A model generated the notes under the pieces. It did no database searches, was not told the origin of the DNA, and saw nothing but the letters and a program-made list of their open reading frames with translations. The translations under genes were made by a program, and so were the position numbers. Below, piece by piece: positions 368 to 35,147 of a stretch of 63,871 nt of DNA. The DNA comes from Pavona decussata (taxonomy: Eukaryota). The stretch is taken from the NCBI GenBank assembly GCA_977016875.1, contig CDRNST010000599.1, forward strand, positions 1-63,871. Direction: 5' to 3'. Position 1 is the stretch's first letter. Each line of letters starts with the position of its first letter.

Positions 368-2170
368 ATGGATCCTGGACATTCTTCTAAATTGCAATCT
401 CATGATGCTGAGGTAAGAGACAAAAGAATCGAGAAAAGGGGTCTGGGTAAAAGGGTTGCAGGTCACTCTCTCCTCTCTTTCTAAAAAAAGGGCCCTCCAA
501 GAAAGAAACAGACGACTTTGGAGAAACTTGGTCTAGATGCGGAAAGATTTTATTGTGGACCACTCTCTTCTCTGGGAACCTTTCGAATCCTTTCTAAGAA
601 CGAAATTAGAACCACTCTGGAAGAAGTTAAATGTATTTCTCTTTTTCCGATCACTCTTCACCCAACAGGGAAACATACCACTTTATCCTCTGCACTCAAC
701 AGATCATTTAGTTCAATTCGTAAGGAAGTATAGGGGGTGTATAGCCTAAGTAGTAAAGTTAATAATTTTAAAGGGAAGTGTATTAATAAAAATTAATCAT
801 ACAGCTACAAATTTGGAAGTAAAAGTGCATCATGATCAACGTAACTTTGTTGTTGAACATGTTACAAACGAAATGATGAGGGATGCTGCTACTATCCAGA
901 AGATTGAGAGTTTGATACATCATATTGCTGACATTTGTGCGAAAGCTCAAGTTGACTCGACACAGTCAGGCCATGGTCAGAAGGTTTGTATGTGTGTGTG
1001 TTTCTGTCTGTCTCCACGCTAGCTGCTACATATACATGTACCTTGTTCATAAGTGTCGAGTGAGGAGTTATAACGTTCCTTTTTGGCGTTGAAGACATAC
1101 ATATTGTGTGAGTTTCACTAAATGCATTAGACAGAAGACTCACCAACAGTTCTGGACAAGACTGGAAACGATTATGTCAAGTGCATGCTTTAATACAGCT
1201 CCGAGGGTCTCATACTTTAGTGTTCATTATTATCTTAATCTGTGTTTTTTGTTTAAGGAGGACTTTGACGAACTTCTATGGTCAAGTATTTCTTCAGCAG
1301 TGTTAGGAAGTAATTCTGTCGTGTTTACGCAATGTGAAATTGCTGGTGAAACTCTGCCTCATGGTGATGTAGACGTAATTGCTAGTCTGATTGGTGAGGA
1401 GAGCAGCATTGACTTCCCTACTGCTATTGGTATTGTTCTTAGTGAGAGCAACGCAACTGTTCCAGTTGATGATGCCATTGGTATATCAGCAAAGACACGC
1501 AATTCATTGCGCACAAAGCCACCTAGTAAGTTTAAATAAGGAAGTAAGTTAAGTCCCTTTGTTTATCTACTACAAATTTATTTTCTACAGATCCCCAAGG
1601 TGTAGTAGAATGCCTTTCATTGTCTGAGATACAGCAGGTCAGAGACAAACCTGTTCTCTTTATTTCAGGTATGTACACAAAATTTAATGAAAATCAGATG
1701 GTTTACCATCTGAAGTCTCCAAGATTTTTATTCAGGTTGATTGTTTGAGGACATAATGTTATGCAGGCTCCCGGGAGGCATTCAGACCATTCTTGAGAGT
1801 ACTGGAACTGGATTTAGTTCTCACTACTGCAGAGGCCATTAAATTTTGGAACACCAAAGAAAACAAACCACACTTGACGGGTCTTGTTCTACTTATTGTT
1901 CTAATGTTGGGAGTGTCTTCATCTTCAGGAGTGCCATTACAATTAGCAAATACACTAATACTTGCGGAGCACAAAATTTTGCAGTGGCCAAAGACAATGT
2001 GGAACTCATATTATGAAAGTAGTGTAGAAAAGTACAGTAAAAAAATTACGGCAAAGAGAAAGGGAAAACAACCCTCTGAAGTCCCTGAACGTATCACACA
2101 TTCAGTGTCAGTACCTGTAGCCATTGTTGATGAGAAAACAGTGTATTTAAAACGTTTTGTACCAAAATAA
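368..2170 (+). CDS. Cassette gene copy 1 (variant A): 6 exons, ~400 aa, putative PD-(D/E)xK/REase-fold protein
   Basis: Exons 368-412, 491-719, 805-983, 1258-1525, 1591-1668 and 1767-2170 join through GT-AG introns with consistent phases (0,1,0,1,1) into 1203 nt = 400 aa + stop. Motifs GDVDVIA...GISAK...PQGVVECL align with AKFDLVV...IETK in the paralog at 23.8-25.6 kb. The fold call is inference. Confidence 0.75.
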
Positions 2171-2445
2171 TCTTGGAAGCTGTATCATATTCCGCTATAC
2201 ACAAATTATTTCTTATACCACTTCCATTGTATAATTAAGATTCACTTTGCTATAGAAGTTAAGGTTGACTACAATGGATACGTATCACAAGTATACATTA
2301 TGCTTGACGCCTATTAGTCTAGTTTACTTCTAGTACTTCTTATAAACTTCTAGTGCCTCTAACAAAATATAGACTACTATAAGAAGCACTGGAAGTTTAT
2401 TATAAGTACTAGAAGTTGGCATCCTAGACAATAATAAATAATAAT

Positions 2446-2492
2446 AAATAATGGACGAAAAGCTCACTGTATCATACAGTGAACTTACTGGT
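2446..2492 (+). ncRNA. 3' half of hammerhead ribozyme downstream of cassette gene copy 1
   Basis: GGAC-GAAA-stem III (agctcactgta/tca/tacagtgaact)-UA-CUGGU, matching the 3' part of the intact HHR at 17492-17570. No adjacent CUGAUGA. Confidence 0.75.
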
Positions 2493-2884
2493 TGCACCAC
2501 ATAAATCGTGTGATACTGAGTGAGTATAATGGCAATGATGTTCATGCTCTGTCATGATACTCACTCTATGTGATAAAGAAATCATACTGTGTGTGTCTCA
2601 TGTGTCTCATAGTATTGCCTTTACGTCATTTGTTGATAAAGGAGCATGATACCAATGACACAGCAATATAATTATTAACAAATTAGATGATTTCAGACAA
2701 GATGACAGAGTCAGAAAGTAAGGCACGGGAAGATATTCTGTAGTGTGTAATGACTAGCTCTGTGCCTTCAGTCTGTGGCTGTCGTGGACCGACAAGCCAC
2801 TTTTACACATGCACTGTATTGATACCGTGTATCTTCCTGGTTGCTCATATATTGTCATCCATTTATGTTTCATGTTAACAAAAA

Positions 2885-5500
2885 AAGTATCTGTGAAAGT
2901 ATCTGTGAAAGTGGCTTACCGGTCCACGACAACCACAGACTGAAGGAACAGAGTTACCTCCAAGCTACTTATTTTGGTGGAAGTATCTCTGTAAGTGGCT
3001 TGTCGGTCCATAGAGTTACAGACTGTAGCCACAGAGCAATCACCATGTAATTTATTGTGGTGGAAGTGCTAGTGAAATTGGTTTGTTAGTCCACGACAGT
3101 CACAGACTGAAGGTACAGAGCTATCTCCATGATACTTATCCTGGTGGAAGTATCTGTGAATGTAGCTTGTCGGTTCACGACAGCCACAGACTGAAGGAAC
3201 AGAGTTACCTCCAAGCTACTTATTTTGGTGGAAGTATCTGTGTAAGTGGCTTGTCGGTATATACAGTTACAGACTGCAGCCACAGAGCTATCTCCATGCT
3301 ACTTATCCTGGTGGAAGTATCTGTGAATGTGGCTTCACGATCCACAACAGCCACAGACTGCAGCTACAGAGTCATCACCATGCAACTTATTGTGGTGGAA
3401 GTATCTGTAAAAGTGGCTTGTCAATCCATGACAGCCACAGATTGAAGGCACAGAGCTACCTCCATGCTACTTATCTCAGTGGAAGTATCTGTAAAAGTGG
3501 CTTGTCAGTCCATGACAACCACAGACTGAAGGTACAGAGCTATCTTCATGCTACTTATCTCGGTGAAAGTATGTGTAAAAGTGGCTTGTTGGTCCATGAC
3601 AGCCACAGACTGAAGGCACAGAGCTATCTTCATGCAACTTACTGTGGTGGAAGTACTTGTGAAAGTGGCTTGTCAGTCCACAACAGTCACAGACTAAAGG
3701 CACAGAGCTATTTCCATGCTACTTATCTCAGTGGAAGTATCTGTAAAAGTGGCTTGTCTGTCCATGACAACCACAGACTGAAGGTACAGAGCTATCTCCA
3801 TGCTACTTATCCAGGTGGAAGTATCTGTGAATGTGGTTTGTCGGTTCACTCAGTCACAGACTGCAGCCATAGAGCCATCACCATGCAACTTACTGTGGTG
3901 GAAGTACTTGTGAAAGTGGCTTGTCAGTCCACAACAGTCACAGACTAAAGGCACAGAGCTATTTCCATGCTACTTATCTCAGTGGAAGTATCTGTAAAAG
4001 TGGCTTGTCTGTCCATGACAACCACAGACTGAAGGTACAGAGCTATCTCCATGCTACTTATCCTGGTGGAAGTATCTGTGAATGTGGTTTGTCGGTTCAC
4101 TCAGTCACAGACTGCAGCCATAGAGCCATCACCATGCAACTTACTGTGGTGGAAGTACTTGTGAAAGTGGCTTGTCAGTCCACAACAGTCACAGACTAAA
4201 GGCACAGAGCTATTTCCATGCTACTTATCTCAGTGGAAGTATCTGTAAAAGTGGCTTGTCTGTCCATGACAACCACAGACTGAAGGTACAGAGCTATCTC
4301 CATGCTACTTATCCTGGTGGAAGTATCTGTGAATGTGGTTTGTCGGTTCACTCAGTCACAGACTGCAGCCATAGAGCCATCACCATGCAACTTACTGTGG
4401 TGGAAGTACTTGTGAAAGTGGCTTGTCAGTCCACAACAGTCACAGACTAAAGGCACAGAGCTATCTCCATGCTACTTATTCTGGTGGAAGTATCTGTGAA
4501 AGTGGCTTGCCAGTCCACAACAACCACAGACTGAAGGAACAGAGTTACCTCCAAGCTACTTATTCTGGTGGAAATGTCTGTAAAAGTGGCTTGTCAGTCC
4601 ACGACAGCCACAGACTGAAGGAACAGGGCTATCTCCATGCTACTTATCCAGGTGGCAGTATCTGTGAATGTGGCTTGTCGGCCATGACAGCCACAGAGTG
4701 AAGGCACAGAGCTAGCTTCATGCTTCTTATCTCAGTGGAAGTATCTGTAAAAGTGGCTTGTCAGTCCACAACAGCCACAGAGCCATCACCATGCAACTTA
4801 TTGTGGTGGAAGTATTTGTAAAAGTGGCTTGTCAATCCACGACAGCCACAGACTGAAGGCACAGAGCTACCTCCATGCTACTTATCTCAGTGGAAGTATC
4901 TGTAAAAGTGGCTTGTCAGTCCATGACAACCACAGACTGAAGGTACAGAGCTATCTCCATGCTACTTATCCTGGTGGAAGTATCTGTAAATGTGGCTTGT
5001 CGGTCTACGATAGCCACAGACTGAAGGCACAGAGCTATCTATCTCCATGCTACTTATTCTGGTGGAAGTATCTGTGAAAGTTATATTTGTGTGTGTTTGT
5101 CTCACAGTGGAAGTATCTGTAAAAGTGGCTTGTCAGTTCACGACAGCCACAGCATAGAGTTACCTCCATGCTACTTATTTTGGTGGAAGTATCTGTAAAA
5201 GTGGCTTGTCGGTCCATACAGTTACAGACTGCAACCACAGAGCCATCACCATGTAACTTATTGTGGTGGAAGTGCTTGTGAAAGTGGCTTGTCAGTCCAC
5301 GACAGTCACAGACTGAAGGTACAGAGCTATCTCCATGCTACTTATCCTGGTGGAAGTATCTGAATGTAGCTTGTCTGTGCTACTTATTTTATTATCCTAC
5401 TGGAGGTATCAGAGAATGTTACTCATACTTTGATGAGAGTTTCGGCATGCATCCAAAGGTCTCCATGCCACTAATCCTGGTGGAAGTATCTGTGAAAGTT
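2885..5500 (+). repeat. 84-bp satellite array, forward (AGCCACAGACTGAAGG strand), with a 251-bp higher-order repeat
   Basis: Unit ~agccacagactgaaggcacagagctatctccatgctacttatcctggtggaagtatctgtgaatgtggcttgtcggtccacgac. ORF starts at 3921, 4172 and 4423 show the 251-bp (84+84+83) period. Preceded by a short reverse unit at 2756-2810. Confidence 0.95.
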
Positions 5501-5540
5501 ACTTATAGGTTCACACAAGTCTGGATATAAGGATACAGAA

Positions 5541-7125
5541 TCATATGTCCTGATATGTACAAGAACAAGCGGACCATGCCGTAAAACTGTTAGCTTGTAC
5601 TGTATAGTTTGTATAGTTAGGGTGTGTTTCCATTCCTTTCTCTACCTTATCAATCATAATTTTTACTTCATCATCTAATAGTGGATTTCCATGAACACAC
5701 GGTGTCCTTTCGACTACTTCGCCACATCCCACATATGCATCTCCATTGAAAAAGTCAACTGAAAAAAAGAACAATACAGTTTAGGAACAGAAACTAGAAC
5801 ATTACGAGTAGTTACCTTTATCTCCAACCCTAAAATAGGTCTCTTCTTTCTTGTCTGCCATCTCTTCACCGTTGTCTTCACCATTGTCTTCACCATTGTC
5901 TGGCATCTGTAAAGTAAATAATACAATTGCAAGGTTCAAGTTAACATATTCACTCCTTGACAATAGCAATCATGTACTTACCACATAATCAGGATGTGCT
6001 CGTTTCCTTTTCTTTAACAATTCACTACTACTTGCAGGACTGGATCACGACACAATAATATCATGATAACAAGATACCTTAGCATAACTTACAGAACTTC
6101 CAGGTACTCCAACGGAGTATATATGCAGTAGTGAAAATCAGATAATTTTGTGCACTTTCGATACACATGGTTCTGAAATCCAGTGGGTGAATCATAGGTG
6201 GCCAAGCACATGAAACACGTAAATTTCATCGGCTTTTTGAAAGTATTAGTCAATCGATAGCAATAGCCACTTGGAGTAATCTGTAATGAAGTGTAAATAA
6301 TAATAACCAGAACACTATTAGAGAATGAAACTACACACTGGGTTCATATCTTCATACGCTTTTAACTTCCTGAAGTCTCTCTTAATCCGATCTTCTGTTC
6401 GTTGATCGTCCCCAGGTTTTTTGGATTCGAAGACTTTAGTAGATCCAGGCTATTGAATAAAATTGACCTTGGACCTCACACTGCTATTATATCAATCACA
6501 ATATCAATTTACTTTTCTATCCAATAACTGTGCAAGAAGATCTTGCGTCACTTTGTGGGCACGCTATGGAAAAAGATAATTAGTGCATGATGTAATAAGT
6601 TGTACAAGTAACTTACAAGATACACATCATTCTCTTCGGTGGCTTGTGCTGTGGGGTTGCTTTGTGTTGTCTGTGGGGTGGCTTGTGCTGTGGGGTTGCT
6701 TTGTGTTGTCTGTGTTTCAGTGATAATTATGAATATTACCAGCACATACACATATACCCATGAAGAATATGTGGAATATCCCAGCTGTTCTGGCGGCATG
6801 GGCCAGACATTGACATTCCATCCTGTTTCATTACCTTTTCATCATCAAGCTGTGAATCAAGCTGTGTGTGTGTGTGTGTGTGTGTGTGTGAGAGTGACAA
6901 GCAGCTAGAGTAACACACACTCACGTAAATTATCTAGCTACTAACCTCCAACACTCTCTCTTGAAGAAGAACCCTTTCCAGCCTCTTCATTAAACACAGC
7001 TTTTTCCCCCCTGTCTCCAAACCTCTCACTTCCAATAGTGCTTTTAGATGTGCTACTTTCATTTTACTTAACTGAATACCACCGACTTCAATGGCTATAC
7101 ATGTAGTTTCTTTCTCCTTCTCCAT
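5541..7125 (-). CDS. Multi-exon gene: N-terminal SAP domain, C2HC finger, C-terminal En/Spm Tnp1-like domain
   Basis: Exon 7125-6946 encodes LSKMKVAHLKALLEVRGLETGGKKLCLMKRL (SAP pattern). Exon 6280-6093 encodes PSGYCYR...TCFMCLATYDSPTGFQNHVYRKC. The last exon to 5541 encodes GCGEVV..VHGNPLLDDEVKIMIDKV..HPNY..SFTAW. Internal exon borders are only partly resolved. Confidence 0.65.
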
Positions 7126-7228
7126 TGCAGACAGTGGTCTTACTCTCCTTGGTAAGAAGTAAATAGTTATCTGTAATTCCAGCACGATAAGTAACACGTA
7201 AGTAACCGCGTGCTGGCCCTTGGATACA

Positions 7229-7286
7229 TGACGTCACGCGTCACAAAATTAATTTGAGAGCACAGGTAGTCATGGTGCGCATGCGC
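7229..7286. promoter_or_regulatory. Putative promoter of the SAP gene (CRE and NRF1-like palindromes)
   Basis: TGACGTCA at 7229-7236 and TGCGCATGCGC at 7276-7286, ~100-160 bp upstream of the ATG at 7125 and just inside the satellite junction. Confidence 0.4.
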
Positions 7287-7302
7287 CGCGTACAACATTG
7301 AA

Positions 7303-8486
7303 AGTGGCACAGACTGCAGCACAGAGCTACTTATTATGGTGGAAGTATCTGTGAATGTGGTTTGTCGGTTCACTCAGTCACAGACTGCAGCCATAGAGCC
7401 ATCACCATGCAACTTACTGTGGTGGAAGTACTTGTGAAAGTGGCTTGTCAGTCCACAACAGTCACAGACTAAAGGCACAGAGCTATCTCCATGCTACTTA
7501 TCCAGGTGGCAGTATCTGTGAATGTGGCTTGTCGGCCATGACAGCCACAGAGTGAAGGCACAGAGCTAGCTTCATGCTTCTTATCTTATCACAGATGCTA
7601 CTATCACCATGCTACTTATTCTAGTGGAAGTATCTGTGAAAGTGGCTTATTGGTCCATGACAGCCACAGACTGCAGCCACACAGATGCCTCCATATTACT
7701 TATTCTGGTGGACAGACAGTCACAGACTGAAGGTACAGAGCTATCTCCATGATACTTATCCTGGTGGAAGTATCTGTGAATGTAGCTTGTCGATTCACGA
7801 CAGCCACAGACTGAAGGAACAGAGTTACCTCCAAGCTACTTATTTTGGTGGAAGTATCTGTGTAAGTGGCTTGTCGGTACATACAGTTACAGACTGCAGC
7901 CACAGAGCCATCACCATGCAACTTATTTTGGTGGAAGTGCTTGTGAAAGTGGCTTGTCAGTCCACGACAGTCACAGACTGAAGGTACAGAGCTATCTCCA
8001 TGCTACTTATCCTGGTGGAAGTATCTGTGAATGTGGCTTCACGATCCACAACAGCCACAGAGTCATCACCATGCAACTTATTGTGGTGAAAGTATCTGTA
8101 AAAGTGGCTTGTCAATCCATGACAGCCACAGACTGAAGGCACAGAGCTACCTCCATGCTACTTATCTCAGTGGAAGTATCTGTAAAAGTGGCTTGTCAGT
8201 CCATGACAACCACAGACTGAAGGTACAGAGCTATCTTCATGCTACTTATCCTGGTGGAAGTATCTGTAAATGTGGCTTGTCTGTCTACGATAGCCACAGA
8301 CTGAAGGCACAGAGCTATCTCCATGCTACTTATCTCAGTGAAAGTATGTGTAAAAGTGGCTTGTTGGTCCATGACAGCCACAGACTGAAGGCACAGAGCT
8401 ATCTTCATGCTACTTGTCCTGGTGGAAGTATCTGTGAATGTGGCTTGTCGGTCCACGACAGCCACAGACTGAAGGCACAGAGCTAG
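7303..8486 (+). repeat. 84-bp satellite array, forward
   Basis: Same unit as 2885-5500; abuts the 3' flank of inverted cassette copy 2. Confidence 0.93.
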
Positions 8487-8738
8487 TCATTACACACTAC
8501 AGAATATCTTCCCGTGCCTTACTTTCTGACTCTGTCATCTTGTCTGAAATCATCTAATTTGTTAATAATTATATTGCTGTGTCATTGGTATCATGCTCCT
8601 TTATCAACAAATGACGTAAAGGCAATACTATGAGACACACACAGTATGATTTCTTTATCACATAGAGTGAGTATCATGACAGAGCATGAACATCATTGCC
8701 ATTATACTCACTCAGTATCACACGATTTATGTGGTGCA

Positions 8739-8785
8739 ACCAGTAAGTTCACTGTATGATACAGTGAGCTTTTCGTCCATTATTT
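8739..8785 (-). ncRNA. 3' half hammerhead of cassette copy 2
   Basis: Reverse complement of 2446-2492. Confidence 0.72.
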
Positions 8786-9060
8786 ATTATTATTTATTAT
8801 TGTCTAGGATGCCAACTTCTAGTACTTATAATAAACTTCCAGTGCTTCTTATAGTAGTCTATATTTTGTTAGAGGCACTAGAAGTTTATAAGAAGTACTA
8901 GAAGTAAACTAGACTAATAGGCGTCAAGCATAATGTATACTTGTGATACGTATCCATTGTAGTCAACCTTAACTTCTATAGCAAAGTGAATCTTAATTAT
9001 ACAATGGAAGTGGTATAAGAAATAATTTGTGTATAGCGGAATATGATACAGCTTCCCAGG

Positions 9061-10863
9061 TTATTCTGGTACAAAACGTTTTAAATACACTTTTTTCTCC
9101 TTAACAATGGCTAAAGGTACTGTCACTGAATGTGTGATACGTTCAGGGACTTCAGAGGGTTGTTTTCCCTTTCTCTTTGCCGTAATTTTTTTACTGTACT
9201 TTTCTACACTACTTTCATAATATGAGTTCCACATTGTCTTTGGCCACTGCAAAACTTTGTGCTCCGCAAGTATTAGTGTATTTGTTAATTGTAATGGCAC
9301 TCCTGAAGATGAAGACACTCCCAACATTAGAACAATAAGTAGAACAAGACCCGTCAAGTGTGGTTTGTTTTCTTTGGTGTTCCAAAATTTAATGGCCTCT
9401 GCAGTAGTGAGAACTAAATCCAGTTCCAGTACTCTCAAGAATGGTCTGAATGCCTCCCGGGAGCCTGCATAACATTATGTCCTCAAACAATCAACCTGAA
9501 TAAAAATCTTGGAGACTTCAGATGGTAAACCATCTGATTTTCATTAAATTTTGTGTACATACCTGAAATAAAGAGAACAGGTTTGTCTCTGATCTGCTGT
9601 ATCTCAGACAATGAAAGGCATTCTACTACAGCTTGGGGATCTGTAGAAAATAAATTTGTAGTAGATAAACAAAGGGACTTAACTTACTTCCTTATTTAAA
9701 CTTACTAGGTGGCTTTGTGCGCAATGAATTGCGTGTCTTTGCTGATATACCAATGGCATCATCAACTGGAACAGTTTCGTTGCTCTCACTAAGAACAATA
9801 CCAATAGCAGTAGGGAAGTCAATGCTGCTCTCCTCACCAATCCGACTAGCAATTACGTCTACATCACCATGAGGCAGAGTTTCACCAGCAATTTCACATT
9901 GCGTAAACACGACAGAATTACTTCCTAACACTGCTGAAGAAATACTTGACCATAGAAGTTCGTCAAAGTCCTCCTTAAACAAAAAACACAGATTAAGATA
10001 ATAATGAACACTAAAGTATGAGACCCTCGGAGCTGTATTAAAGCATGCACTTGACATAATCGTTTCCAGTCTTGTCCAGAACTGTTGGTGAGTCTTCTGT
10101 CTAATGCATTTAGTGAAACTCACACAATATGTATGTCTTCAACGCCAAAAAGGAACGTTATAACTCCTCACTCGACACTTATGAACAAGGTACATGTATA
10201 TGTAGCAGCTAGCGTGGAGACAGACAGAAACACACACACATACAAACCTTCTGACCATGGCCTGACTGTGTCGAGTCAACTTGAGCTTTCGCACAAATGT
10301 CAGCAATATGATGTATCAAACCCTCAATCTTCAGGATAGTAGCAGCATCCATCGTCATTTCGTTTGTAACATATTCAACAACAAAGTTACGTTGATCATG
10401 ATGCACTTTTACTTCCAAATTTGTAGCTGTATGATTAATTTTTATTAATACACTTCCCTTTAAAATTATTAACTTTACTACTTAGGCTATACACCCCCTA
10501 TACTTCCTTACGAATTGAACTAAATGATCTGTTGAGTGCAGAGGATAAAGTGGTATGTTTCCCTGTTGGGTGAAGAGTGATCGGAAAAAGAGAAGTACAT
10601 ATAACTTCTTCCAGAGTGGTTCTAATTTCGTTCTTAGAAAGGATTCGAAAGGTTCCCAGAGAAGAGAGTGGTCCACAATAAAATCTTTCCGCATCTAGAC
10701 CAAGTTTCTCCAAAGTCGTCTGTTTCTTTCTTGGAGGGCCCTTTTTTTAGAAAGAGAGGAGAGAGTGACCTGCAACCCTTTTACCCAGACCCCTTTTCTC
10801 GATTCTTTTGTCTCTTACCTCAGCATCATGAGATTGCAATTTAGAAGAATGTCCAGGATCCAT
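9061..10863 (-). CDS. Cassette gene copy 2 (variant B2), inverted
   Basis: Position p of copy 1 maps to 11231-p with the same splice sites. Exon 3 reads YVTNEMTMDAATILKIEGL. Confidence 0.75.
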
Positions 10864-11251
10864 ATTCCTATAGTATGTATAGAATAGCACGGACCTAGTT
10901 CCAATCATAATGAGCCAATTTAAGTTGTGGCCACATCGCTTGTTATAGTGGTTAACTCTTAATTAAATGCGTAGATGCATTTCATCTCTACTTACTCTTT
11001 AGTTGAAGACAAGGAAAAGAGCGGACGGCGAGAAACCTAGATAGGACAAAAAAGTTCTCGATCTAAAATTGAGGTGCGAACTCATTAATATTCCACGTGA
11101 CTTTTGCACATACCAATGCGTGTCATTGTGGGTGTGTCCCCATACTGTTCGCCCCATGCATATGTAAGCGCATCAGTAGCAGAGTATCTGTATTATCTGT
11201 ATCACATATAGAGTAAGTATTAGGACAATTGAGCCACAATATCTGTGGTAG

Positions 11252-14200
11252 TAGGATAAGTAGCATGGAGATAGCTCTGTGCCTTCAGTCTGTGGCTGTC
11301 ATGGACCAACAAGCCCCTTTTACTAGCACTATAATTTACACTGTCGTGGACTGACAAGCAACTTTCACAAGCACTTCCACCACAATAAATTGCATGATGT
11401 TAGCTCTGTGCCTTCAGTCTGTGACTGTCGTGGACTGACAAGCCACTTTCACAAGCACTTCCACCACAATAAGTTGCATGGTGATGGCTCTGTGGCTGCA
11501 GTCTGTAACTGTATGGACCGACAAGCCACTTACACAGACACTTCCACCAAAATAAGTAGCTTGGAGGTAACTCTGTTCCTTCAGTCTGTGGTTGTTGTGG
11601 ACTGGCAAGCCACTTTCACAGATACTTCCACCAGAATAAGTAGCATGGAGATAGCTCTGTGCCTTCAGTCTGTGGCTGTCGTGGACAGACAAGCCACTTT
11701 TACAGATACTTCCACTGAGATAAATGGAAATAGCTCTGTGCCTTTAGTCTGTGACTGTTGTGGACTGACAAGCCACTTTCACAAGTACTTCCACCACAGT
11801 AAGTTGCATGGTGATGGCTCTATGGCTGCAGTCTGTGACTGAGTGAACCGACAAACCACATTCACAGATACTTCCACCAGAATAAGTAGCTCTGTGCTGC
11901 AGTCTGTGGACCAACAAGCCACTTTCACAAATACTTCCACCAGAATAAGTATCTTCCTGGACCGACGAGCCACTTACACAGATACTTCCACCAGAATAAG
12001 TAGCATGGTGATGGCTCTATGGCTGCAGTCTGTGACTGAGTGAACAGACAAACCACATTCACAGATACTTCCACCAGGATAAGTAGCATGGAGATAGCTC
12101 TGTACCTTCAGTCTGTGGTTGTCATGGACAGACAAGCCACTTTTACAGATACTTCCACTGAGATAAGTAGCATGGAAATAGCTCTGTGCCTTTAGTCTGT
12201 GACTGTTGTGGACTGACAAGCCACTTTCACAAGCACTTCCACCACAATAAGTTGCATGGTGATACTTCCACCAGGATAAGTAGCATGGAGATAGCTCTGT
12301 ACCTTCAGTCTGTGGTTGTCATGGACAGACAAGCCACTTTTACAGATACTTCCACTGAGATAAGTAGCATGGAAATAGCTCTGTGCCTTTAGTCTGTGAC
12401 TGTTGTGGACTGACAAGCCACTTTCACAAGCACTTCCACCACAATAAGTTGCATGGTGATGGCTCTGTGGCTGCAGTCTGTAACTGTATGGACCGACAAG
12501 CCACTTACACAGACACTTCCACCAAAATAAGTAGCATGGAAATAGCTCTGTTCCTTCAGTGTGGCTATCGTGGACCGACAAGCCACTTTTACGGACACTT
12601 CCACCAGAATAAGTAGCATGGAGGTAGCTCTGTGCCTTCAGTCTGTGGCTGTCGTGGACCGACAAGCCACATTCACAGATACTTCCACCAGGACAAGTAG
12701 CATGAAGATAGCTCTGTGCCTTCAGTCTGTGGCTGTCATGGACCAACAAGCCACTTTTACACATACTTTCACTGAGATAAGTAGCATGGAGATAGCTCTG
12801 TGCCTTCAGTTTGTGGCTATCGTAGACCGACAAGCCACATTTACAGATACTTCCACCAGGATAAGTAGCATGGAGATAGCTCTGTACCTTCAGTCTGTGG
12901 TTGTCATGGACAAACAAGCCCCTTTTACTAGCACTATAATTTACACTGTCGTGGACTGACAAGCCACTTTCACAAGCACTTCCACCACAATAAGTTGCAT
13001 GGTGATGGCTCTGTGGCTGCAGTCTGTAACTGTATGGACCGACAAGCCACTTACACAGACACTTCCACCAAAATAAGTAGCTTGGAGGTAACTCTGTTCC
13101 TTCAGTCTGTGGTTGTTGTGGACTGGCAAGCCACTTTCACAGATACTTCCACCAGAATAAGTAGCATGGAGATAGCTCTGTGCCTTCAGTCTGTGGCTGT
13201 CGTGGACAGACAAGCCACTTTTACAGATACTTCCACTGAGATAAATGGAAATAGCTCTGTGCCTTTAGTCTGTGACTGTTGTGGACTGACAAGCCACTTT
13301 CACAAGTACTTCCACCACAGTAAGTTGCATGGTGATGGCTCTATGGCTGCAGTCTGTGACTGAGTGAACCGACAAACCACATTCACAGATACTTCCACCA
13401 GAATAAGTAGCTCTGTGCTGCAGTCTGTGGACCAACAAGCCACTTTCACAAATACTTCCACCAGAATAAGTATCTTCCTGGACCGACGAGCCACTTACAC
13501 AGATACTTCCACCAGAATAAGTAGCATGGAGATAGCTCTGTTCCTTCAGTCTGTGGCTATCGTGGACCGACAAGCCACTTTTACGGACACTCTGTTGTGG
13601 ACTGACAAGCCACTTTCACAAGTACTTCCACCACAGTAAGTTGCATGGTGATGGCTCTATGGCTGCAGTCTGTGACTGAGTGAACCGACAAACCACATTC
13701 ACAGATACTTCCACCAGAATAAGTAGCTCTGTGCTGCAGTCTGTGGACCAACAAGCCACTTTCACAAATACTTCCACCAGAATAAGTATCTTCCTGGACC
13801 GACGAGCCACTTACACAGATACTTCCACCAGAATAAGTTGCATGGAGATAGCTCTGTTCCTTCAGTCTGTGGCTATCGTGGACCGACAAGCCACTTTTAC
13901 GGACACTTCCACCAGAATAAGTAGCATGGAGGTAGTTCAGTCTGTGGCTGTCGTGGACCGACAAGCCACATTCACAGATACTTCCACCAGGACAAGTAGC
14001 ATGAAGATAGCTCTGTGCCTTCAGTCTGTGGCTGTCATGGACCAACAAGCCACTTTTACACATACTTCCACCAAAATAAGTAGCTTGGAGGTAACTCTGT
14101 TCCTTCAGTCTGTGGTTGTTGTGGACTGGCAAGCCACTTTCACAGATACTTCCACCAGAATAAGTAGCATGGAGATAGCTCTGTGCCTTCAGTCTGTGGC

Positions 14201-17172: not shown

Positions 17173-17380
17173 GTATCATACAGCATGAGTATGATTTTTT
17201 TTGTTATCCGTATGACATAGAGTGAGCATCATGACAGAGCATGAACATCATGGCAATAATTCCAATCGATATACCTAAATCACACGTAAACCACATACAC
17301 CATCCCTTGAACTCCATGATACGAGGAGCATGATACTCATTATTTCAGATATCAATGGATTTTTGCTATGATCCTCATGC

Positions 17381-18610: not shown

Positions 18611-20413
18611 ATGGATCCTGGACATTCTTCTAAATTGCAATCTCATGATGCTGAGGTAAGAGACAAAAGAATCGAGAAAAGGGGTCTGGGTAAAAGGGTT
18701 GCAGGTCACTCTCTCCTCTCTTTCTAAAAAAAGGGCCCTCCAAGAAAGAAACAGACGACTTTGGAGAAACTTGGTCTAGATGCGGAAAGATTTTATTGTG
18801 GACCACTCTCTTCTCTGGGAACCTTTCGAATCCTTTCTAAGAACGAAATTAGAACCACTCTGGAAGAAGTTAAATGTATTTCTCTTTTTCCGATCACTCT
18901 TCACCCAACAGGGAAACATACCACTTTATCCTCTGCACTCAACAGATCATTTAGTTCAATTCGTAAGGAAGTATAGGGGGTGTATAGCCTAAGTAGTAAA
19001 GTTAATAATTTTAAAGGGAAGTGTATTAATAAAAATTAATCATACAGCTACAAATTTGGAAGTAAAAGTGCATCATGATCAACGTAACTTTGTTGTTGAA
19101 CATGTTACAAACGAAATGATGAGGGATGCTGCTACTATCCAGAAGATTGAGAGTTTGATACATCATATTGCTGACATTTGTGCGAAAGCTCAAGTTGACT
19201 CGACACAGTCAGGCCATGGTCAGAAGGTTTGTATGTGTGTGTGTTTCTGTCTGTCTCCACGCTAGCTGCTACATATACATGTACCTTGTTCATAAGTGTC
19301 GAGTGAGGAGTTATAACGTTCCTTTTTGGCGTTGAAGACATACATATTGTGTGAGTTTCACTAAATGCATTAGACAGAAGACTCACCAACAGTTCTGGAC
19401 AAGACTGGAAACGATTATGTCAAGTGCATGCTTTAATACAGCTCCGAGGGTCTCATACTTTAGTGTTCATTATTATCTTAATCTGTGTTTTTTGTTTAAG
19501 GAGGACTTTGACGAACTTCTATGGTCAAGTATTTCTTCAGCAGTGTTAGGAAGTAATTCTGTCGTGTTTACGCAATGTGAAATTGCTGGTGAAACTCTGC
19601 CTCATGGTGATGTAGACGTAATTGCTAGTCTGATTGGTGAGGAGAGCAGCATTGACTTCCCTACTGCTATTGGTATTGTTCTTAGTGAGAGCAACGCAAC
19701 TGTTCCAGTTGATGATGCCATTGGTATATCAGCAAAGACACGCAATTCATTGCGCACAAAGCCACCTAGTAAGTTTAAATAAGGAAGTAAGTTAAGTCCC
19801 TTTGTTTATCTACTACAAATTTATTTTCTACAGATCCCCAAGGTGTAGTAGAATGCCTTTCATTGTCTGAGATACAGCAGGTCAGAGACAAACCTGTTCT
19901 CTTTATTTCAGGTATGTACACAAAATTTAATGAAAATCAGATGGTTTACCATCTGAAGTCTCCAAGATTTTTATTCAGGTTGATTGTTTGAGGACATAAT
20001 GTTATGCAGGCTCCCGGGAGGCATTCAGACCATTCTTGAGAGTACTGGAACTGGATTTAGTTCTCACTACTGCAGAGGCCATTAAATTTTGGAACACCAA
20101 AGAAAACAAACCACACTTGACGGGTCTTGTTCTACTTATTGTTCTAATGTTGGGAGTGTCTTCATCTTCAGGAGTGCCATTACAATTAGCAAATACACTA
20201 ATACTTGCGGAGCACAAAATTTTGCAGTGGCCAAAGACAATGTGGAACTCATATTATGAAAGTAGTGTAGAAAAGTACAGTAAAAAAATTACGGCAAAGA
20301 GAAAGGGAAAACAACCCTCTGAAGTCCCTGAACGTATCACACATTCAGTGTCAGTACCTGTAGCCATTGTTGATGAGAAAACAGTGTATTTAAAACGTTT
20401 TGTACCAAAATAA
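18611..20413 (+). CDS. Cassette gene copy 3 (variant A, apparently identical to copy 1)
   Basis: Offset +18243 from copy 1; all ORF-track peptides are identical. Confidence 0.75.
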
Positions 20414-20688
20414 TCTTGGAAGCTGTATCATATTCCGCTATACACAAATTATTTCTTATACCACTTCCATTGTATAATTAAGATTCACTTTGCTATAGAA
20501 GTTAAGGTTGACTACAATGGATACGTATCACAAGTATACATTATGCTTGACGCCTATTAGTCTAGTTTACTTCTAGTACTTCTTATAAACTTCTAGTGCC
20601 TCTAACAAAATATAGACTACTATAAGAAGCACTGGAAGTTTATTATAAGTACTAGAAGTTGGCATCCTAGACAATAATAAATAATAAT

Positions 20689-20735
20689 AAATAATGGACG
20701 AAAAGCTCACTGTATCATACAGTGAACTTACTGGT
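20689..20735 (+). ncRNA. 3' half hammerhead of cassette copy 3
   Basis: aaataatGGAC-GAAA-stem III-UA-CUGGU with predicted cleavage after A20730; complements the 5' half at 17591-17628. Confidence 0.75.
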
Positions 20736-20994
20736 TGCACCACATAAATCGTGTGATACTGAGTGAGTATAATGGCAATGATGTTCATGCTCTGTCATGA
20801 TACTCACTCTATGTGATAAAGAAATCATACTGTGTGTGTCTCATGTGTCTCATAGTATTGCCTTTACGTCATTTGTTGATAAAGGAGCATGATACCAATG
20901 ACACAGCAATATAATTATTAACAAATTAGATGATTTCAGACAAGATGACAGAGTCAGAAAGTAAGGCACGGGAAGATATTCTGTAGTGTGTAAT

Positions 20995-23813: not shown

Positions 23814-25565
23814 ATGGCAAGTCATTGTCTGAGTGCTTGACTTTACGTGAAGACCAGGCTAGGTCACCACCATCTGTGAGCAGTGAGAAAATGAGACGAA
23901 GAATTGAACTTGAGGTTGTCAGAGAAAAAAAAAAGTTGGTGCAACTTGGACATATATTTTCACCCTCACTGGATGAATTAGTCCAAAATGAAACGTTTCT
24001 TAATCTTTTGCAATGTCAAATCCTCTCGCTGTGTTCAGTGGCAACAATTCAATCAGAAAAGATCAAGAATGCTGACACAGTTCGTGAAACAGTAAGTTTC
24101 TTGCTGCCTTCTGGCTAGCTAGACCTTCAAAACTAACTACTGCAGATAGCTTCCAAGGGCTTATGTTAAGATATCATTTGATCTTCAAAGTGTAAGACCA
24201 TACTAAATTTGATCAGACCTATGATGCTAATGGTCCGATATCACATTAATTAATAGTCAGATTTCTGCTGACCAGATCTGAAAAGTAATTAAAACTGACC
24301 TTTGCTAGACCTTCCTTTTTTTTGCGCACATGTAATAAAAATGAGTGTCTAGCTTGCCAGACTAAGTCCACTGTAGCTTAGGGGGCTATCTTATAATGTA
24401 TATAATTTCTGGATTCCATGCAGGAGCTCGTGTTTGAGCAGGAGCTGTTTTGTAATATTCTACAAACTGTTCTTGTTGCTCCGTATGTACTTCATTCCCA
24501 ATGCCAAACGGAATGCCAAACACTTCCAACAGCTAAATTCGACTTAGTTGTAACCAGAGAAACAGTTGCTCCGTATGTACTTCATTCCCAATGCCAAACG
24601 GAATGCCAAACACTTCCAACAGCTAAATTCGACTTAGTTGTAACCAGAGAAACAGCATGCGCCATGGAAAATTCCGTGACGGTCACAATTGAAACTAAGA
24701 GTGTTGGGTCTGTAAGTGAAGAGACTCTGGACACAGGGATGACAAACAAGACCGACACTACAATGAATTTGGAGAAACCTAGTATGTTACATAACTAGTA
24801 TGTTACATAATTATAGAACCTTTCATTCCAACAAATTCCAAATTTTCATAGCAGAATTGTCACAGAATGCACTTTGTTGCCACCACTATGATTTTTGATA
24901 TTCGTTGCCATAGTGAGTTGAAAGTATGAATGAGTTTGGCTTCTTTTCCTCCATTTGTTTTATACAGATGTTTCAGTTGTACTGGAGGCACTGATTTTTT
25001 CTGAGTTAAACTGCAACAATGTAGTGAGACTTGTATCAGGTAAGTATCACTACACTAAAAAAACCCGATCATACTGCATGTGGAGGACATGTCCACACAG
25101 AATATACAGTACGTATAATTATTGTATTTTATAATTGCAGGAAGCAGAAGTTTTGTTAGGCCGTTCATCAGAGTTCGTAAACACGACACTCTACTTACAT
25201 TGCCAGCAGTAAAGAAATGGTGGTTGGCGGAAGAATTTCAAATTGAAGGATGTGTAATTCTTTTACTTTTTCTGCAAGCTGGTACAGGCATCTACCCTGG
25301 ATTTGATGAGATTTTTTTAAACGAAGCATGTAGAGCAATAGATTGTTGTTGTGGATGGGGCAAGGCGTACGAACCCATTGAGGTGAAATACCCCAAAACG
25401 TTGAAGCAGACAAAGCCAACAACCAATTCCTCTGCTTTGAGAGGATTAACACTTGATGAAAGTTTAACAGTACGCCATATGTCTAAAGATGAAGCAATGT
25501 CACTGTACTATAGCGAAAGACGTGATGCACCACCTGCTTCCAAAAAGACAAAACCCAGCAAATGA
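23814..25565 (+). CDS. Diverged paralog of the cassette gene, PD-(D/E)xK-like (last four exons; 5' exons at ~23250-23700 unresolved)
   Basis: Exons 23814-24091, 24424-24781, 24968-25039 and 25141-25565 have the same phases as cassette exons 3-6. FEQELFCNI..SQCQ..LPTAKFDLVV..IETK, VVLEALIFSEL..LVSG and SRSFVRPFIRV..DTLLT align with the cassette protein. In-frame 90-bp duplication at 24475-24654. Confidence 0.7.
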
Positions 25566-27580: not shown

Positions 27581-28722
27581 TTTTGATAAAATTGTCCCCA
27601 TGTGTCCCCACCTTGGGGTTTCTAGGGTTAGCACGGGCGCAGCGTATGGTGTCCATTTATGACAAACCCCAAGCTCATGTCGATGGGGACACAGTCCATA
27701 CTAACTGTGGTCTTGCACGTTATGTGTGCGTAGAGTGACTCGACCCTGATCCAATGCACACGACCCTCACTTCTGTAACCCAAACCTGAACTAACCCTAC
27801 CGTTTCTCGATTTCTAGCCGTAACCCCAACGTTCTCATTGGCAACATGAGGCGACATACATTGTATGCTATCCAACCCCATACATTTCAAATCCTGAATC
27901 GAATGTTTTTTGTGTCCCTTTTTGGGGACATTTGTCCCCAAAATTATTTTTTAGTGTTATGAACTTTGGTGTGGTTATCGTGGTACCATCCTACCCTAAT
28001 TTTTTTTTTAAATTGTGGTCGAAAAGTGCTCAAATGTGGTTTAAAACGATCTGTTTTGGTAATCCTAACCCTTACCTCGACAATGATTGCAGCATTGTTT
28101 CAACTTGTTGATAGGTTTGTTGATACGTGCATCGTGTCGTCGATTGTTTTGGAAAACAATTAGAACCTTAAGCCTCACTACAGCCATGATAGGGTTAGTT
28201 ACTTTATTACTGAGGTTTTATGCTAACAATCTTCTCAAACTCTAACTCCTTACTCTACTTCTAACTATTTTTGAGCTCTCTTGTACATATTGACATCATC
28301 CTACCTTTATTTATGCTTGGATATTACTCTTTCATCTCAAAATCGATTTATTCCTATTAAATGTGCACAGGAAGTAACGTGGGGGCTTCAATTAATATTC
28401 TGATGTACGTGTTTCCATTTAACGCACACCGGAGTAAGGATTAGGGTTCTATAATTTCGATTCTACATATATTTCTATTTAACGCACACCTGAAGTAACC
28501 CTAACCCTAATGATCCCATTTCTAATTAATGCCTATTCACTGTAACCCTAACTCAATAACGGACTTGTAATGTGAAAAAATGTATACATATATTAAAATC
28601 CTAACTTGTATAACATCACAATGTTCAGTTAAATGTTCTAATTCCTAACCCTAACCCTAATTCAAATTTACTAAAACATTCGATTTGCTAGCCCAGCTTT
28701 TTCCTGGGATCACCTCCTAGAC

Positions 28723-31906: not shown

Positions 31907-32114
31907 GTATCATACAGCATGAGTATGATTTTTTTTGTTATCCGTATGACATAGAGTGAGCATCATGACAGAGCATGAACATCATGGCAATAATTCCAAT
32001 CGATATACCTAAATCACACGTAAACCACATACACCATCCCTTGAACTCCATGATACGAGGAGCATGATACTCATTATTTCAGATATCAATGGATTTTTGC
32101 TATGATCCTCATGC

Positions 32115-32362
32115 TTACTGATTGCACCACATAAATCGTGGGACCAACTGATGAGTCCTCCCACTAAAAATAATGGACGAAAAGCTCACTGTATCATACA
32201 GTGAACTGCTTGCACCACATAAATCGTGGGACCAGCTGATGAGTCCTCCCACTCTAAAAGTAATGGACGAAAAGTTCACTGTATCATACAGTGAACTTAC
32301 TGGTTGCACTACATAAATTGTGGGACCAGCTGATGAGTCCTCCCACTCTAAAAATAATGGAC
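32115..32362 (+). ncRNA. Tandem hammerhead array, second copy; intact unit 32226-32304
   Basis: Same as 17381-17628 at offset +14734; predicted cleavage after A32299. Confidence 0.88.
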
Positions 32363-33344
32363 ATTGCTATGATACTCATGCTGTATGATACAGATACACA
32401 CAGCATTATTGTTTGCTATGATCATAGCAATGAACCAACCAATTGATGGGTTCAGATCCCAGTTTGCCACTAGCTTTGATTGCTATGATACTGCATGGGA
32501 TTACAGGACCATGATACAACTCTATGGGCACAATAATATCGTAAAAAATCATTATACGGGGCATTGATATCTGTATCACACAGCATGGGTATTCCATATC
32601 ATGGCAATAAGTCGTTTATATCATGCTCTTGTATCATAGCATTAATTTTTATGAGGCCACATCATAAAAGCATGCCAATTTGCATTTATTGTATTAATCG
32701 GTTAATTGGTTAATTGGTTAACACTCTACAGCATGAGTAATTATAGCAGTAATGAGTGTCAGCTTTCCTGTATCATAATGCATGAGTATCATAGCCGTAA
32801 TCCCAATAAAAATCTGTATCACACAGCATGAACATCATGGCATGAATCATGGCATCATGCTAGGTATCACAGGAACATGCTACTAAATAATGCACACGAA
32901 AACAGTCATTGCACACTACAGAAAGTACACACACCTTATGACCTAACCCTAACCCCTAACCACAGATATTGTGGCTCAATTGTCCTAATACTTACTCTAT
33001 ATGTGATACAGATAATACAGATACTCTGCTACTGATGCGCTTACATATGCATGGGGCGAACAGTATGGGGACACACCCACAATGACACGCATTGGTATGT
33101 GCAAAAGTCACGTGGAATATTAATGAGTTCGCACCTCAATTTTAGATCGAGAACTTTTTTGTCCTATCTAGGTTTCTCGCCGTCCGCTCTTTTCCTTGTC
33201 TTCAACTAAAGAGTAAGTAGAGATGAAATGCATCTACGCATTTAATTAAGAGTTAACCACTATAACAAGCGATGTGGCCACAACTTAAATTGGCTCATTA
33301 TGATTGGAACTAGGTCCGTGCTATTCTATACATACTATAGGAAT

Positions 33345-35147
33345 ATGGATCCTGGACATTCTTCTAAATTGCAATCTCATGATGCTGAGGTAAGAGACAA
33401 AAGAATCGAGAAAAGGGGTCTGGGTAAAAGGGTTGCAGGTCACTCTCTCCTCTCTTTCTAAAAAAAGGGCCCTCCAAGAAAGAAACAGACGACTTTGGAG
33501 AAACTTGGTCTAGATGCGGAAAGATTTTATTGTGGACCACTCTCTTCTCTGGGAACCTTTCGAATCCTTTCTAAGAACGAAATTAGAACCACTCTGGAAG
33601 AAGTTATATGTACTTCTCTTTTTCCGATCACTCTTCACCCAACAGGGAAACATACCACTTTATCCTCTGCACTCAACAGATCATTTAGTTCAATTCGTAA
33701 GGAAGTATAGGGGGTGTATAGCCTAAGTAGTAAAGTTAATAATTTTAAAGGGAAGTGTATTAATAAAAATTAATCATACAGCTACAAATTTGGAAGTAAA
33801 AGTGCATCATGATCAACGTAACTTTGTTGTTGAACATGTTACAAACGAAATGATGGAGGATGCTGCTACTATCCTGAAGATTGAGGATTTGATACATCAT
33901 ATTGCTGACATTTGTGCGAAAGCTCAAGTTGACTCGACACAGTCAGGCCATGGTCAGAAGGTTTGTATGTGTGTGTGTTTCTGTCTGTCTCCACGCTAGC
34001 TGCTACATATACATGTACCTTGTTCATAAGTGTCGAGTGAGGAGTTATAACGTTCCTTTTTGGCGTTGAAGACATACATATTGTGTGAGTTTCACTAAAT
34101 GCATTAGACAGAAGACTCACCAACAGTTCTGGACAAGACTGGAAACGATTATGTCAAGTGCATGCTTTAATACAGCTCCGAGGGTCTCATACTTTAGTGT
34201 TCATTATTATCTTAATCTGTGTTTTTTGTTTAAGGAGGACTTTGACGAACTTCTATGGTCAAGTATTTCTTCAGCAGTGTTAGGAAGTAATTCTGTCGTG
34301 TTTACGCAATGTGAAATTGCTGGTGAAACTCTGCCTCATGGTGATGTAGACGTAATTGCTAGTCGGATTGGTGAGGAGAGCAGCATTGACTTCCCTACTG
34401 CTATTGGTATTGTTCTTAGTGAGAGCAACGAAACTGTTCCAGTTGATGATGCCATTGGTATATCAGCAAAGACACGCAATTCATTGCGCACAAAGCCACC
34501 TAGTAAGTTTAAATAAGGAAGTAAGTTAAGTCCCTTTGTTTATCTACTACAAATTTATTTTCTACAGATCCCCAAGCTGTAGTAGAATGCCTTTCATTGT
34601 CTGAGATACAGCAGATCAGAGACAAACCTGTTCTCTTTATTTCAGGTATGTACACAAAATTTAATGAAAATCAGATGGTTTACCATCTGAAGTCTCCAAG
34701 ATTTTTATTCAGGTTGATTGTTTGAGGACATAATGTTATGCAGGCTCCCGGGAGGCATTCAGACCATTCTTGAGAGTACTGGAACTGGATTTAGTTCTCA
34801 CTACTGCAGAGGCCATTAAATTTTGGAACACCAAAGAAAACAAACCACACTTGACGGGTCTTGTTCTACTTATTGTTCTAATGTTGGGAGTGTCTTCATC
34901 TTCAGGAGTGCCATTACAATTAACAAATACACTAATACTTGCGGAGCACAAAGTTTTGCAGTGGCCAAAGACAATGTGGAACTCATATTATGAAAGTAGT
35001 GTAGAAAAGTACAGTAAAAAAATTACGGCAAAGAGAAAGGGAAAACAACCCTCTGAAGTCCCTGAACGTATCACACATTCAGTGACAGTACCTTTAGCCA
35101 TTGTTAAGGAGAAAAAAGTGTATTTAAAACGTTTTGTACCAGAATAA
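33345..35147 (+). CDS. Cassette gene copy 4 (variant B1)
   Basis: Offset +32977 from copy 1 with the same splice sites. Exon 3 reads HVTNEMMEDAATILKIEDL. Confidence 0.75.

What the first reader, a model, noticed from the sequence alone, without database searches (positions are those of the whole stretch)
368..35147. Cassette-gene copies differ almost only by amino-acid-changing substitutions
By eye, copy 1 versus copy 4 shows 16 changed codons, all non-synonymous (K>I, I>T, R>E, Q>L, S>D, L>R, A>E, G>A, V>I, A>T, I>V, S>T, V>L, D>K, T>K, K>E). I saw no synonymous change and no difference in the introns I compared. Two exon-3 codons take three states (R/E/M and S/D/G), and a C-terminal codon takes V/L/I once copy 5 is included. 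This implies strong diversifying selection or targeted diversification, as in conflict, immunity, allorecognition or drive genes. It also supports the exon model and argues the variants are real.
Basis: partly seen in the sequence, partly recalled or inferred. Interest (0 to 1): 0.85.

Follow-up and report, generated by a model that had tools for sequence, protein, structure and literature searches.

The report
Orphan gene copies under extreme diversifying selection
A spliced, expressed 400-codon gene of unknown function sits in several near-identical copies inside satellite DNA of a marine invertebrate, and the copies differ almost only by amino-acid changes, which marks unusually strong positive selection.

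Summary
The window is a whole 63.9-kb contig. It holds four full copies and one cut copy of a ~2.8-kb cassette carrying a six-coding-exon, 400-codon gene.

- **Within the window:** the four full copies differ at 21 coding bases in 18 codons, all amino-acid-changing. No difference lies in 600 intron bases or the 367-base 5' flank.
- **In other samples:** Tara and other metagenome contigs show three further lineages with the same pattern. Exons differ by 4-7%, introns 3-5 by 0-1 base in 437, and dS is at most 0.015.
- **Tests:** pairwise omega is 2.6-10.7. My own codon models give M0 omega 7.8 (p 8e-9 against 1). M2a against M1a gives p 2e-19, with about 22% of codons at omega ~29. Fifteen codons take three or more residues.
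- **Expression:** poly-A RNA contigs confirm three introns exactly and fit the other two.
- **Mechanism:** the mutation spectrum has no signature, so selection, not targeted mutagenesis, explains the pattern.
- **Function:** unknown. Pfam, PDB, Atlas and fold searches, run exon by exon, found nothing.

The scan has not noted this family on other DNA.

The parts
368..2170 (+). Copy 1 (type A) of the gene, start codon to stop. Coding exons 368-412, 491-719, 805-983, 1258-1525, 1591-1668, 1767-2170. A non-coding 5' exon ends at 235.
   Evidence: All introns GT-AG, phases close, 400 codons. RNA joints 983|1258, 1525|1591 and 1668|1767, and a 5'UTR joint at 236.
9061..10863 (-). Copy 2 (type B). 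Exons 10819-10863, 10512-10740, 10248-10426, 9706-9973, 9563-9640, 9061-9464.
   Evidence: 99% identical to copy 1. Intact ORF and splice sites, with its own H110Y, M116T, R117M and S127G.
18611..20413 (+). Copy 3 (type A), gene identical to copy 1.
   Evidence: 100% identity over 1803 bases.
33345..35147 (+). Copy 4 (type B). Differs from copy 2 only at five bases of exon 3 (C1 positions 858, 877, 879, 880, 910).
   Evidence: Copies 2 and 4 are 99.85% identical over 3.4 kb.
63637..63871 (-). Copy 5, only the last 78 codons, cut by the contig end. Its own changes are T329R, I at codon 384, V392A and F397L, all non-synonymous.
540..927 (+). Hypervariable module 1 (copy 1 coordinates): second half of exon 2, intron 2 and first two thirds of exon 3. 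Includes codons 32, 62, 76, 117 and 127, each with 3-4 residue states.
1258..1897 (+). Conserved core (exon 4, exon 5, start of exon 6). Few changes among close copies. Exon 4 and the start of exon 6 are well conserved in the wider family; exon 3 is the least conserved.
1898..2174 (+). Hypervariable module 2: the C-terminal ~90 codons plus the first 4 bases after the stop. It differs from copy 1 at 20-25 of 245 bases (1898-2142) in each outside lineage.

Best explanation
The cassette gene is a real, spliced, polyadenylated protein-coding gene of a lineage-restricted family with no recognisable domain.

Its copies arose very recently by segmental duplication, direct and inverted, inside an 84-bp satellite. 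Silent divergence between copies is about 0.2% within this genome and at most about 1% to copies in other samples.

Since those duplications, positive diversifying selection has driven amino-acid replacements into two surface-like modules: codons ~20-135 and ~295-400. These flank a conserved core (exons 4-5 and the start of exon 6).

The same codons have been hit repeatedly, and recombination or gene conversion among copies has shuffled the variants.

Shown: copy structure, exon model, expression, omega well above 1, recurrent multi-state codons, conserved introns and flanks.

Inferred: the variable modules are recognition surfaces of a protein engaged in a genetic conflict or self/non-self discrimination, and the core carries the constant activity.
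For: All 21 coding differences among the four copies are non-synonymous, with 0 of 600 intron bases changed.

Flank divergence is 0.17% against 1.6% in the coding sequence.

Independent lineages L017, L030/L031 and L022-L028 show exons at 4-7% divergence, introns 3-5 at 0-1 of 437, Nd:Sd of about 20:1, and omega 2.6-10.7.

Codon models: pairwise ML gives omega 8.1, p 7e-5. M0 omega is 7.8, p 8e-9. M2a versus M1a gives p 2e-19, and 25 sites have posterior above 0.95.

Of 400 codons, 75 vary, 74 with residue change, and 15 have three or more residues.

Most coding indels are in frame (-21, +6, +3), and every complete copy has an intact ORF except L022 (22-bp deletion) and L031 (+1 base).

Spliced poly-A RNA contigs support the exon model.

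The wider family (about 60% identity) keeps the exon structure with whole-gene omega 0.7-1.8.

Four-gamete incompatibilities occur in 143 of 1081 site pairs.
Against: Function is unknown. Pfam, PDB sequence search, Atlas and fold searches on single exons found nothing, so the 'recognition surface' reading is inference.

Many changes are adjacent (for example 879/880, 2024/2025, 2117-2123). These may be multi-nucleotide events or short conversion tracts, which inflate site-model tests.

Recombination violates the single-tree assumption of my codon models, which are home-made, not codeml.

The source-sample run X1 showed only type A in its contigs. Type B in this genome therefore rests on the assembly, on a second assembly of apparently the same sample, and on the same alleles in other samples.

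Two relatives carry frame-breaking indels: L022 has a 22-bp deletion and L031 has +1 A.
Confidence: 0.8

Rival explanations
1. Mosaic gene conversion from more divergent family members, possibly through cDNA, pastes short divergent patches into otherwise identical copies. Under this reading the exon-limited differences reflect a mutational mechanism rather than point-by-point selection.
For: Differences are strongly clustered, for example 14 in 67 bases at 2108-2174, running 4 bases past the stop. Intron 2, inside a patch, also differs. Four-gamete incompatibilities are present. A distant paralogue lies in the window at about 24433-25565.
Against: Donors at family-level divergence (dS 0.07-0.28, omega about 1) would bring many synonymous changes. 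The observed ratio is about 51:2.5. No donor copy exists in this genome. Introns were not lost, as cDNA conversion would tend to cause. Conversion may shuffle variants but cannot create the N:S excess.
Confidence: 0.1
2. An enzymatic, exon-targeted hypermutation system (DGR-like retrohoming, deaminase-driven or error-prone repair) diversifies the gene.
For: Changes are confined to parts of the transcribed exons and recur at the same codons.
Against: The spectrum includes all classes of base change with no base or motif bias. Third codon positions within the patches are spared: 1 of the 21 changed bases within the window is at a third position. No known mutator does this. There is no template repeat or second copy elsewhere in the genome.
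Confidence: 0.04
3. The gene is decaying or under relaxed constraint, and the introns and flanks look conserved because they carry a non-coding function.
For: Two relatives have frame-breaking indels. The C-terminal tail is poorly conserved in the wider family and modelled with low confidence.
Against: Relaxed constraint gives omega near 1, not 5-10. Synonymous sites are as conserved as introns and as 2 kb of upstream flank. All window copies keep ORF and splice sites. Spliced poly-A RNA exists.
Confidence: 0.03
4. Assembly or sequencing artefact: variants are errors, or collapsed haplotypes were stitched into one contig.
For: The contig is a small, repeat-rich, unplaced piece. Another assembly of apparently the same sample orders the segments differently. 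X1 contigs show only type A.
Against: Errors would not avoid introns and third positions. Type-B alleles (636C, 879G, 898T, 909G, 1388G, 1454A, 1638A and others) recur in independent DNA and RNA samples. If A and B were alleles rather than paralogues, the selection signal would be unchanged.
Confidence: 0.02

Closest known systems
Accelerated evolution of duplicated venom genes (crotaline snake PLA2 isozymes, Conus toxins). Habu genome paper PMC6062510 and its references 20, 22 and 23; details of those older papers are from my own knowledge.
   Same: Young duplicated genes with KA/KS above 1. Protein-coding parts diverge faster than introns and untranslated regions. Gene clusters.
   Different: This protein has a hydrophilic N-terminus with no evident signal peptide, is 400 residues long, has no toxin-like domain, and sits in satellite DNA. 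Omega over the whole protein (~8) is at the extreme end. No link to venom is shown.
Sea-urchin Sp185/333 (SpTransformer) immune gene family (own knowledge, not tested here).
   Same: Clustered, very similar genes flanked by short tandem repeats that may promote duplication and recombination. Diversity concentrated in coding sequence.
   Different: No sequence similarity was sought or shown. Sp185/333 diversity is a mosaic of presence/absence elements, whereas here it is point replacements at recurrent codons. Immune expression is not known here.
Rapidly evolving selfish or conflict gene families in repeats (fission-yeast wtf drivers, Drosophila Stellate/Dox-type ampliconic genes) (own knowledge).
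   Same: Multi-copy genes embedded in repeats, fast protein evolution, gene conversion among copies.
   Different: No evidence here of drive, of germline expression or of a poison/antidote pair.
MHC-type balancing selection with intron homogenisation (own knowledge).
   Same: High dN at recognition codons, multi-state codons, recombination. Linked intron diversity is raised only next to the selected exons (intron 2 here).
   Different: No Ig or MHC fold. It is unknown whether the variants are alleles, paralogues or both.

Membership tests
Positively selected ('accelerated evolution') duplicated gene family | dN significantly above dS between copies | tested here: met
   Nei-Gojobori omega 2.6-10.7, infinite within the window. 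ML M0 omega 7.8, p 8e-9. M2a versus M1a p 2e-19.
Positively selected ('accelerated evolution') duplicated gene family | Introns and flanks more conserved than coding exons | tested here: met
   Introns 0/600 within the window. Introns 3-5 differ at 0-1 of 437 bases against 4-7% in exons in other lineages. Intron 2 is an exception at 3 of 75-85.
Positively selected ('accelerated evolution') duplicated gene family | Functional gene: intact ORF, splicing, expression | tested here: met
   Two relatives (L022, L031) carry frame-breaking indels.
Secreted venom or toxin gene | N-terminal signal peptide and a known toxin domain | tested here: not met
   Exon 1 and the start of exon 2 are hydrophilic and basic, read directly from the translation. 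No Pfam domain on any exon.
   No Pfam or PDB profile match. In the exon-4 alignment an invariant D (residue 39) is present, but the candidate (D/E)xK position is not conserved. The exon-4 model has pLDDT 34 and is unusable.
hAT transposase C-terminal dimerisation domain (PF05699) | Profile-profile similarity to the domain | tested here: not met
   One family member hit weakly at E 0.022. hhalign of the exon-6 family profile against nine hAT domains of this genome gave probability 1.2%.
Diversity-generating retroelement or other templated hypermutation | Template repeat plus a base-specific mutation pattern | tested here: not met
   No other copy in the genome. The changes include all classes of base change.

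The most novel reading that the evidence does not exclude
The family is the specificity component of a so far undescribed recognition or selfish system of a marine invertebrate, such as allorecognition, a toxin-antidote or drive element, or an intracellular restriction factor. It would be built as a constant core flanked by two hypervariable specificity modules. Satellite-mediated duplication would amplify it, and recombination among copies would keep it diverse.
Probability: 0.15. Interest if true: 0.85.

Novelty: new member of a known kind. Interest (0 to 1): 0.66.

Why it matters
Whole-protein omega near 8, with a fifth of codons near 30, between copies whose introns are almost identical, is among the strongest signals of adaptive protein evolution.

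The signal lies in a gene family that no database annotates. It recurs in several independent reef and marine samples. This points to an active, unknown molecular arms race or self/non-self system in a marine invertebrate.

It also gives a compact, testable target: 25 candidate sites, two variable modules and one conserved core. The locus further shows how satellite DNA can serve as a nursery for duplicating and diversifying a gene.

Tried and rejected
- **Zinc fingers.** The 84-bp periodicity first suggested C2H2 zinc-finger arrays, but no frame shows a zinc-finger pattern. It is a satellite.
- **Domain searches, exon by exon.** Pfam on five exons and on two family alignments found nothing consistent. 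PDB sequence profiles found nothing. ESM Atlas by features found no usable hit.
- **Exon-6 structure.** The model has pLDDT 71. Foldseek against PDB had no hit at E up to 0.001, Atlas TM-scores were at most 0.33, and VIA-wide gave a best Z of 2.8.
- **Exon-4 structure.** pLDDT 34, unusable.
- **hAT dimerisation domain.** Rejected by hhalign at 1.2% probability.
- **Full-length homologue.** A full HMMER scan of 1.8 billion cluster representatives with exon 6 returned 21 hits, none an evident full-length family member; the family hits are short single-exon ORF fragments.
- **Hammerheads.** Rfam found no hammerhead in the window at gathering score, or at E up to 1 in 17000-21200.
- **Circular RNA.** An apparent 'goes back' joint in the X1 contig looked like a 3165-nt circle. 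It is explained by the upstream copy of a 68-nt repeat being laid on its downstream copy, so it is no evidence for a circle.
- **G2 intron divergence.** The apparent 5.8% was a misalignment around a 316-bp insertion in intron 1. Without intron 1 it is 4 of 512.
- **Joined protein.** Exons were joined only inside scripts to count codons.
Full report
**What is there**

The window is an entire 63,871-base contig (C599) of a 602-Mb eukaryotic assembly. Much of it is arrays of an 84-bp satellite.

A ~2.8-kb cassette is embedded in the satellite four times in full and once cut by the contig end:
- C1 1-2810 (+)
- C2 8430-11230 (-)
- C3 18244-21053 (+)
- C4 32978-35778 (+)
- C5 63041-63871 (-)

No other copy exists in the assembly by DNA search or by protein search with exon 4 or exon 6.

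**Exon model**

In C1 coordinates the coding exons are 368-412, 491-719, 805-983, 1258-1525, 1591-1668 and 1767-2170. All five introns are GT-AG and the phases close. The product is 400 codons, intact in all four full copies.

Logan contigs of a poly-A RNA-seq run (X18) and of a probable RNA run (X15) carry joints that equal introns 3, 4 and 5. Their loose ends fit introns 1 and 2. A further joint shows a non-coding 5' exon ending at 235. These RNAs come from a related allele (lineage G2 below), so the family is transcribed, spliced and polyadenylated.

**The observation**

C1 and C3 are identical in the gene (type A). C2 and C4 are type B.
- Among the four copies, 21 coding bases in 18 codons differ, and every change alters the residue.
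- Codon 117 is R/M/E and codon 127 is S/G/D. Codon 384 is V/L/I with C5.
- C2 and C4 differ at only five bases in 3.4 kb, all within 53 bases of exon 3 and all non-synonymous.
- No difference lies in 600 intron bases or in the 367-base 5' part.
- Outside the coding sequence there are two changes just after the stop and one 9-bp indel.

Nei-Gojobori counts are Nd 19 and Sd 0. Fisher tests give p 0.006 for N versus S and 5e-7 for N versus S plus non-coding sites. In the 5.4-kb duplicated segment around C3 and C4, flanks and introns differ at about 0.17% against 1.6% in the coding sequence.

**Independent copies**

Searches with exon 6 and exon 4, followed by cluster look-ups, led to contigs from other samples:
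- a Tara scaffold, L017;
- three loci on contigs of 0.1-2.2 Mb in assembly ERZ21788760: L022, L030 and L031;
- further Tara scaffolds L023-L025, L027, L029 and Logan contigs L026, L028.

They form three lineages: T17 (L017), G3 (L030/L031) and G2 (L022-L028). Against C1:

| Region | Differences |
|---|---|
| Introns 3-5 | 0-1 of 437 |
| Intron 2 | 3 of 75-85 |
| Exon 2 | 10-15 of 229 |
| Exon 3 | 6-13 of 179 |
| Exon 6, 1898-2142 | 20-25 of 245 |

- Between lineages, omega is 2.6-10.7 with dS at most 0.015; the closest pairs have no synonymous change, so omega is undefined there.
- Coding indels are in frame (-21 in exon 1, +6 in exon 2, +3 at the start of exon 3). The exceptions are a 22-bp deletion in L022 and a +1 A in L031, which an independent DNA run also shows.
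- Differences listed for three further runs (X8, X15, X18) give 27:1, 23:1 and 15:2 non-synonymous to synonymous codons.
- Type-B alleles recur in all these data, so they are real. Type A is mostly the derived state.
- A contig from ERZ25073805 is 100% identical to 11 kb of the window. It is treated as the same sample, not as independent support.

**Formal tests**

These use my own implementation of Goldman-Yang-type codon models, not codeml.
- Pairwise: C1-T17 omega 8.1 (likelihood-ratio p 7e-5), C4-T17 omega 4.5 (p 0.002), C1-C4 omega unbounded (p 0.0013).
- On a seven-sequence tree: M0 omega 7.8, p 8e-9 against omega=1. M2a versus M1a gives 2dlnL 85.8, p 2e-19, with 22% of codons at omega ~29. 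Twenty-five sites have posterior above 0.95.
- Over eight sequences, 75 of 400 codons vary, 74 with residue change, and 15 have three or more residues.

Caveats: many changes are adjacent and may be multi-nucleotide events. Recombination is evident, with four gametes in 143 of 1081 site pairs. Both inflate site tests. The simple N:S counts do not depend on a tree.

**Qualifier on 'exons versus introns'**

Variation is patchy. The variable stretches are 540-927 (which includes intron 2), a few sites in exon 4, and 1898-2174. Exon parts outside the patches are as conserved as introns. The robust signal is the N:S excess. The raised divergence of intron 2 alone is what linkage to selected sites, with recombination elsewhere, would give.

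**Mechanism**

The spectrum includes all classes of base change. Third codon positions are spared: 1 of the 21 changed bases within the window is at a third position. There is no template copy. A mutator alone cannot give this pattern. Conversion from distant paralogues would import synonymous changes, because family-level dS is 0.07-0.28.

The best reading is therefore recent satellite-associated duplication followed by strong diversifying selection on two modules that flank a conserved core, with shuffling by recombination. In the wider family (about 60% identity, same exon structure), whole-gene omega is 0.7-1.8. Conserved motifs sit in exon 4 and the start of exon 6. Fast protein evolution is thus a long-standing property of the family.

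**Function**

Function is unknown. Each exon was searched by reference.
- Pfam, PDB profiles, Atlas features and fold searches gave nothing.
- A weak hAT-domain hint was rejected.
- The nuclease label from a neighbouring note is neither supported nor excluded.
- The N-terminus is hydrophilic and basic, so a classical secreted toxin is unlikely.

**Organism**

The organism is a marine invertebrate. Metazoan genes (a PAF-domain gene and ankyrin repeats) lie on the same contig. Runs holding the gene are labelled coral and marine metagenomes. I cannot name the species.

**Comparison and verdict**

The phenomenon matches the known 'accelerated evolution' of young duplicated genes such as venom PLA2 and conotoxins (PMC6062510 and its references). 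It also resembles repeat-flanked diversifying immune or selfish families. The gene family itself is new and unannotated, and the strength of the signal is extreme. I rate it a new member of a known kind, with interest 0.66.

Noticed in passing
window 18205-18224 and 32939-32958; also 28499-28510, 28643-28660, 40536-40547, 40859-40876: Short telomere-type repeats (CCCTAA/TTAGGG). Two of them abut the 5' boundary of cassette copies 3 and 4 directly. There are 8 matches against 0.15 expected by chance. This may mark a subtelomeric origin or junctions of telomere-seeking retroelements.
   Followed up: partly
window 17000-21200 and whole window: Rfam finds no hammerhead ribozyme at gathering score in the window, or at E up to 1 around copy 3. 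Neighbouring first-reader notes describe hammerheads there. A 68-nt element downstream of the gene (C1 2446-2513) is repeated twice upstream of copies 3 and 4 (17434-17497 and 17524-17591 for copy 3). A CTGATGAG box appears in a read-derived contig.
   Followed up: partly
window 2326-2416 (and the same place in each copy, e.g. 20569-20659): A ~90-nt imperfect palindrome or hairpin in the cassette's 3' part. It gives only sub-threshold hits to miRNA-precursor models.
   Followed up: no
window ~24433-25565: A distant paralogue of the cassette gene. tblastn gives exon-6-like 31% identity (E 2e-5) and exon-4-like (E 2e-4). It confirms a neighbouring note.
   Followed up: partly
window 39289-39735; 57057-59986; 41643-42656: A PAF (PCNA-associated factor) domain ORF and ankyrin-repeat ORFs lie on the same contig. 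The 337-aa ORF that a neighbouring note calls Crinkler-type REase has no Pfam match.
   Followed up: partly
L031:~5070 (C1 position 2038) and L022 (C1 682-703): Some relatives are broken. L031 has a +1 A in an A-run, also seen in an independent DNA run (X8). L022 has a 22-bp deletion in exon 2.
   Followed up: partly
L015/L016 (ERZ25073805 contig of 27.7 kb) versus window 2755-21137: A second assembly, apparently of the same sample, joins the segment after copy 3 to the satellite that follows copy 1. The order of segments in this contig may therefore be ambiguous, or the locus may be a higher-order repeat.
   Followed up: no
codon 347 (window 2006-2008 in copy 1): This is the only codon with purely synonymous variation, and it shows three synonymous states (TCA, TCC, TCT) across lineages.
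   Followed up: no
window 2880-5400, 11270-16100, 42700-49900 and elsewhere: The 84-bp satellite stays open in several frames on both strands for up to ~320 codons. It has no zinc-finger or other recognisable pattern. The close relatives of the cassette in other assemblies also lie beside this satellite, while the distant ones (L020, L021) do not.
   Followed up: partly
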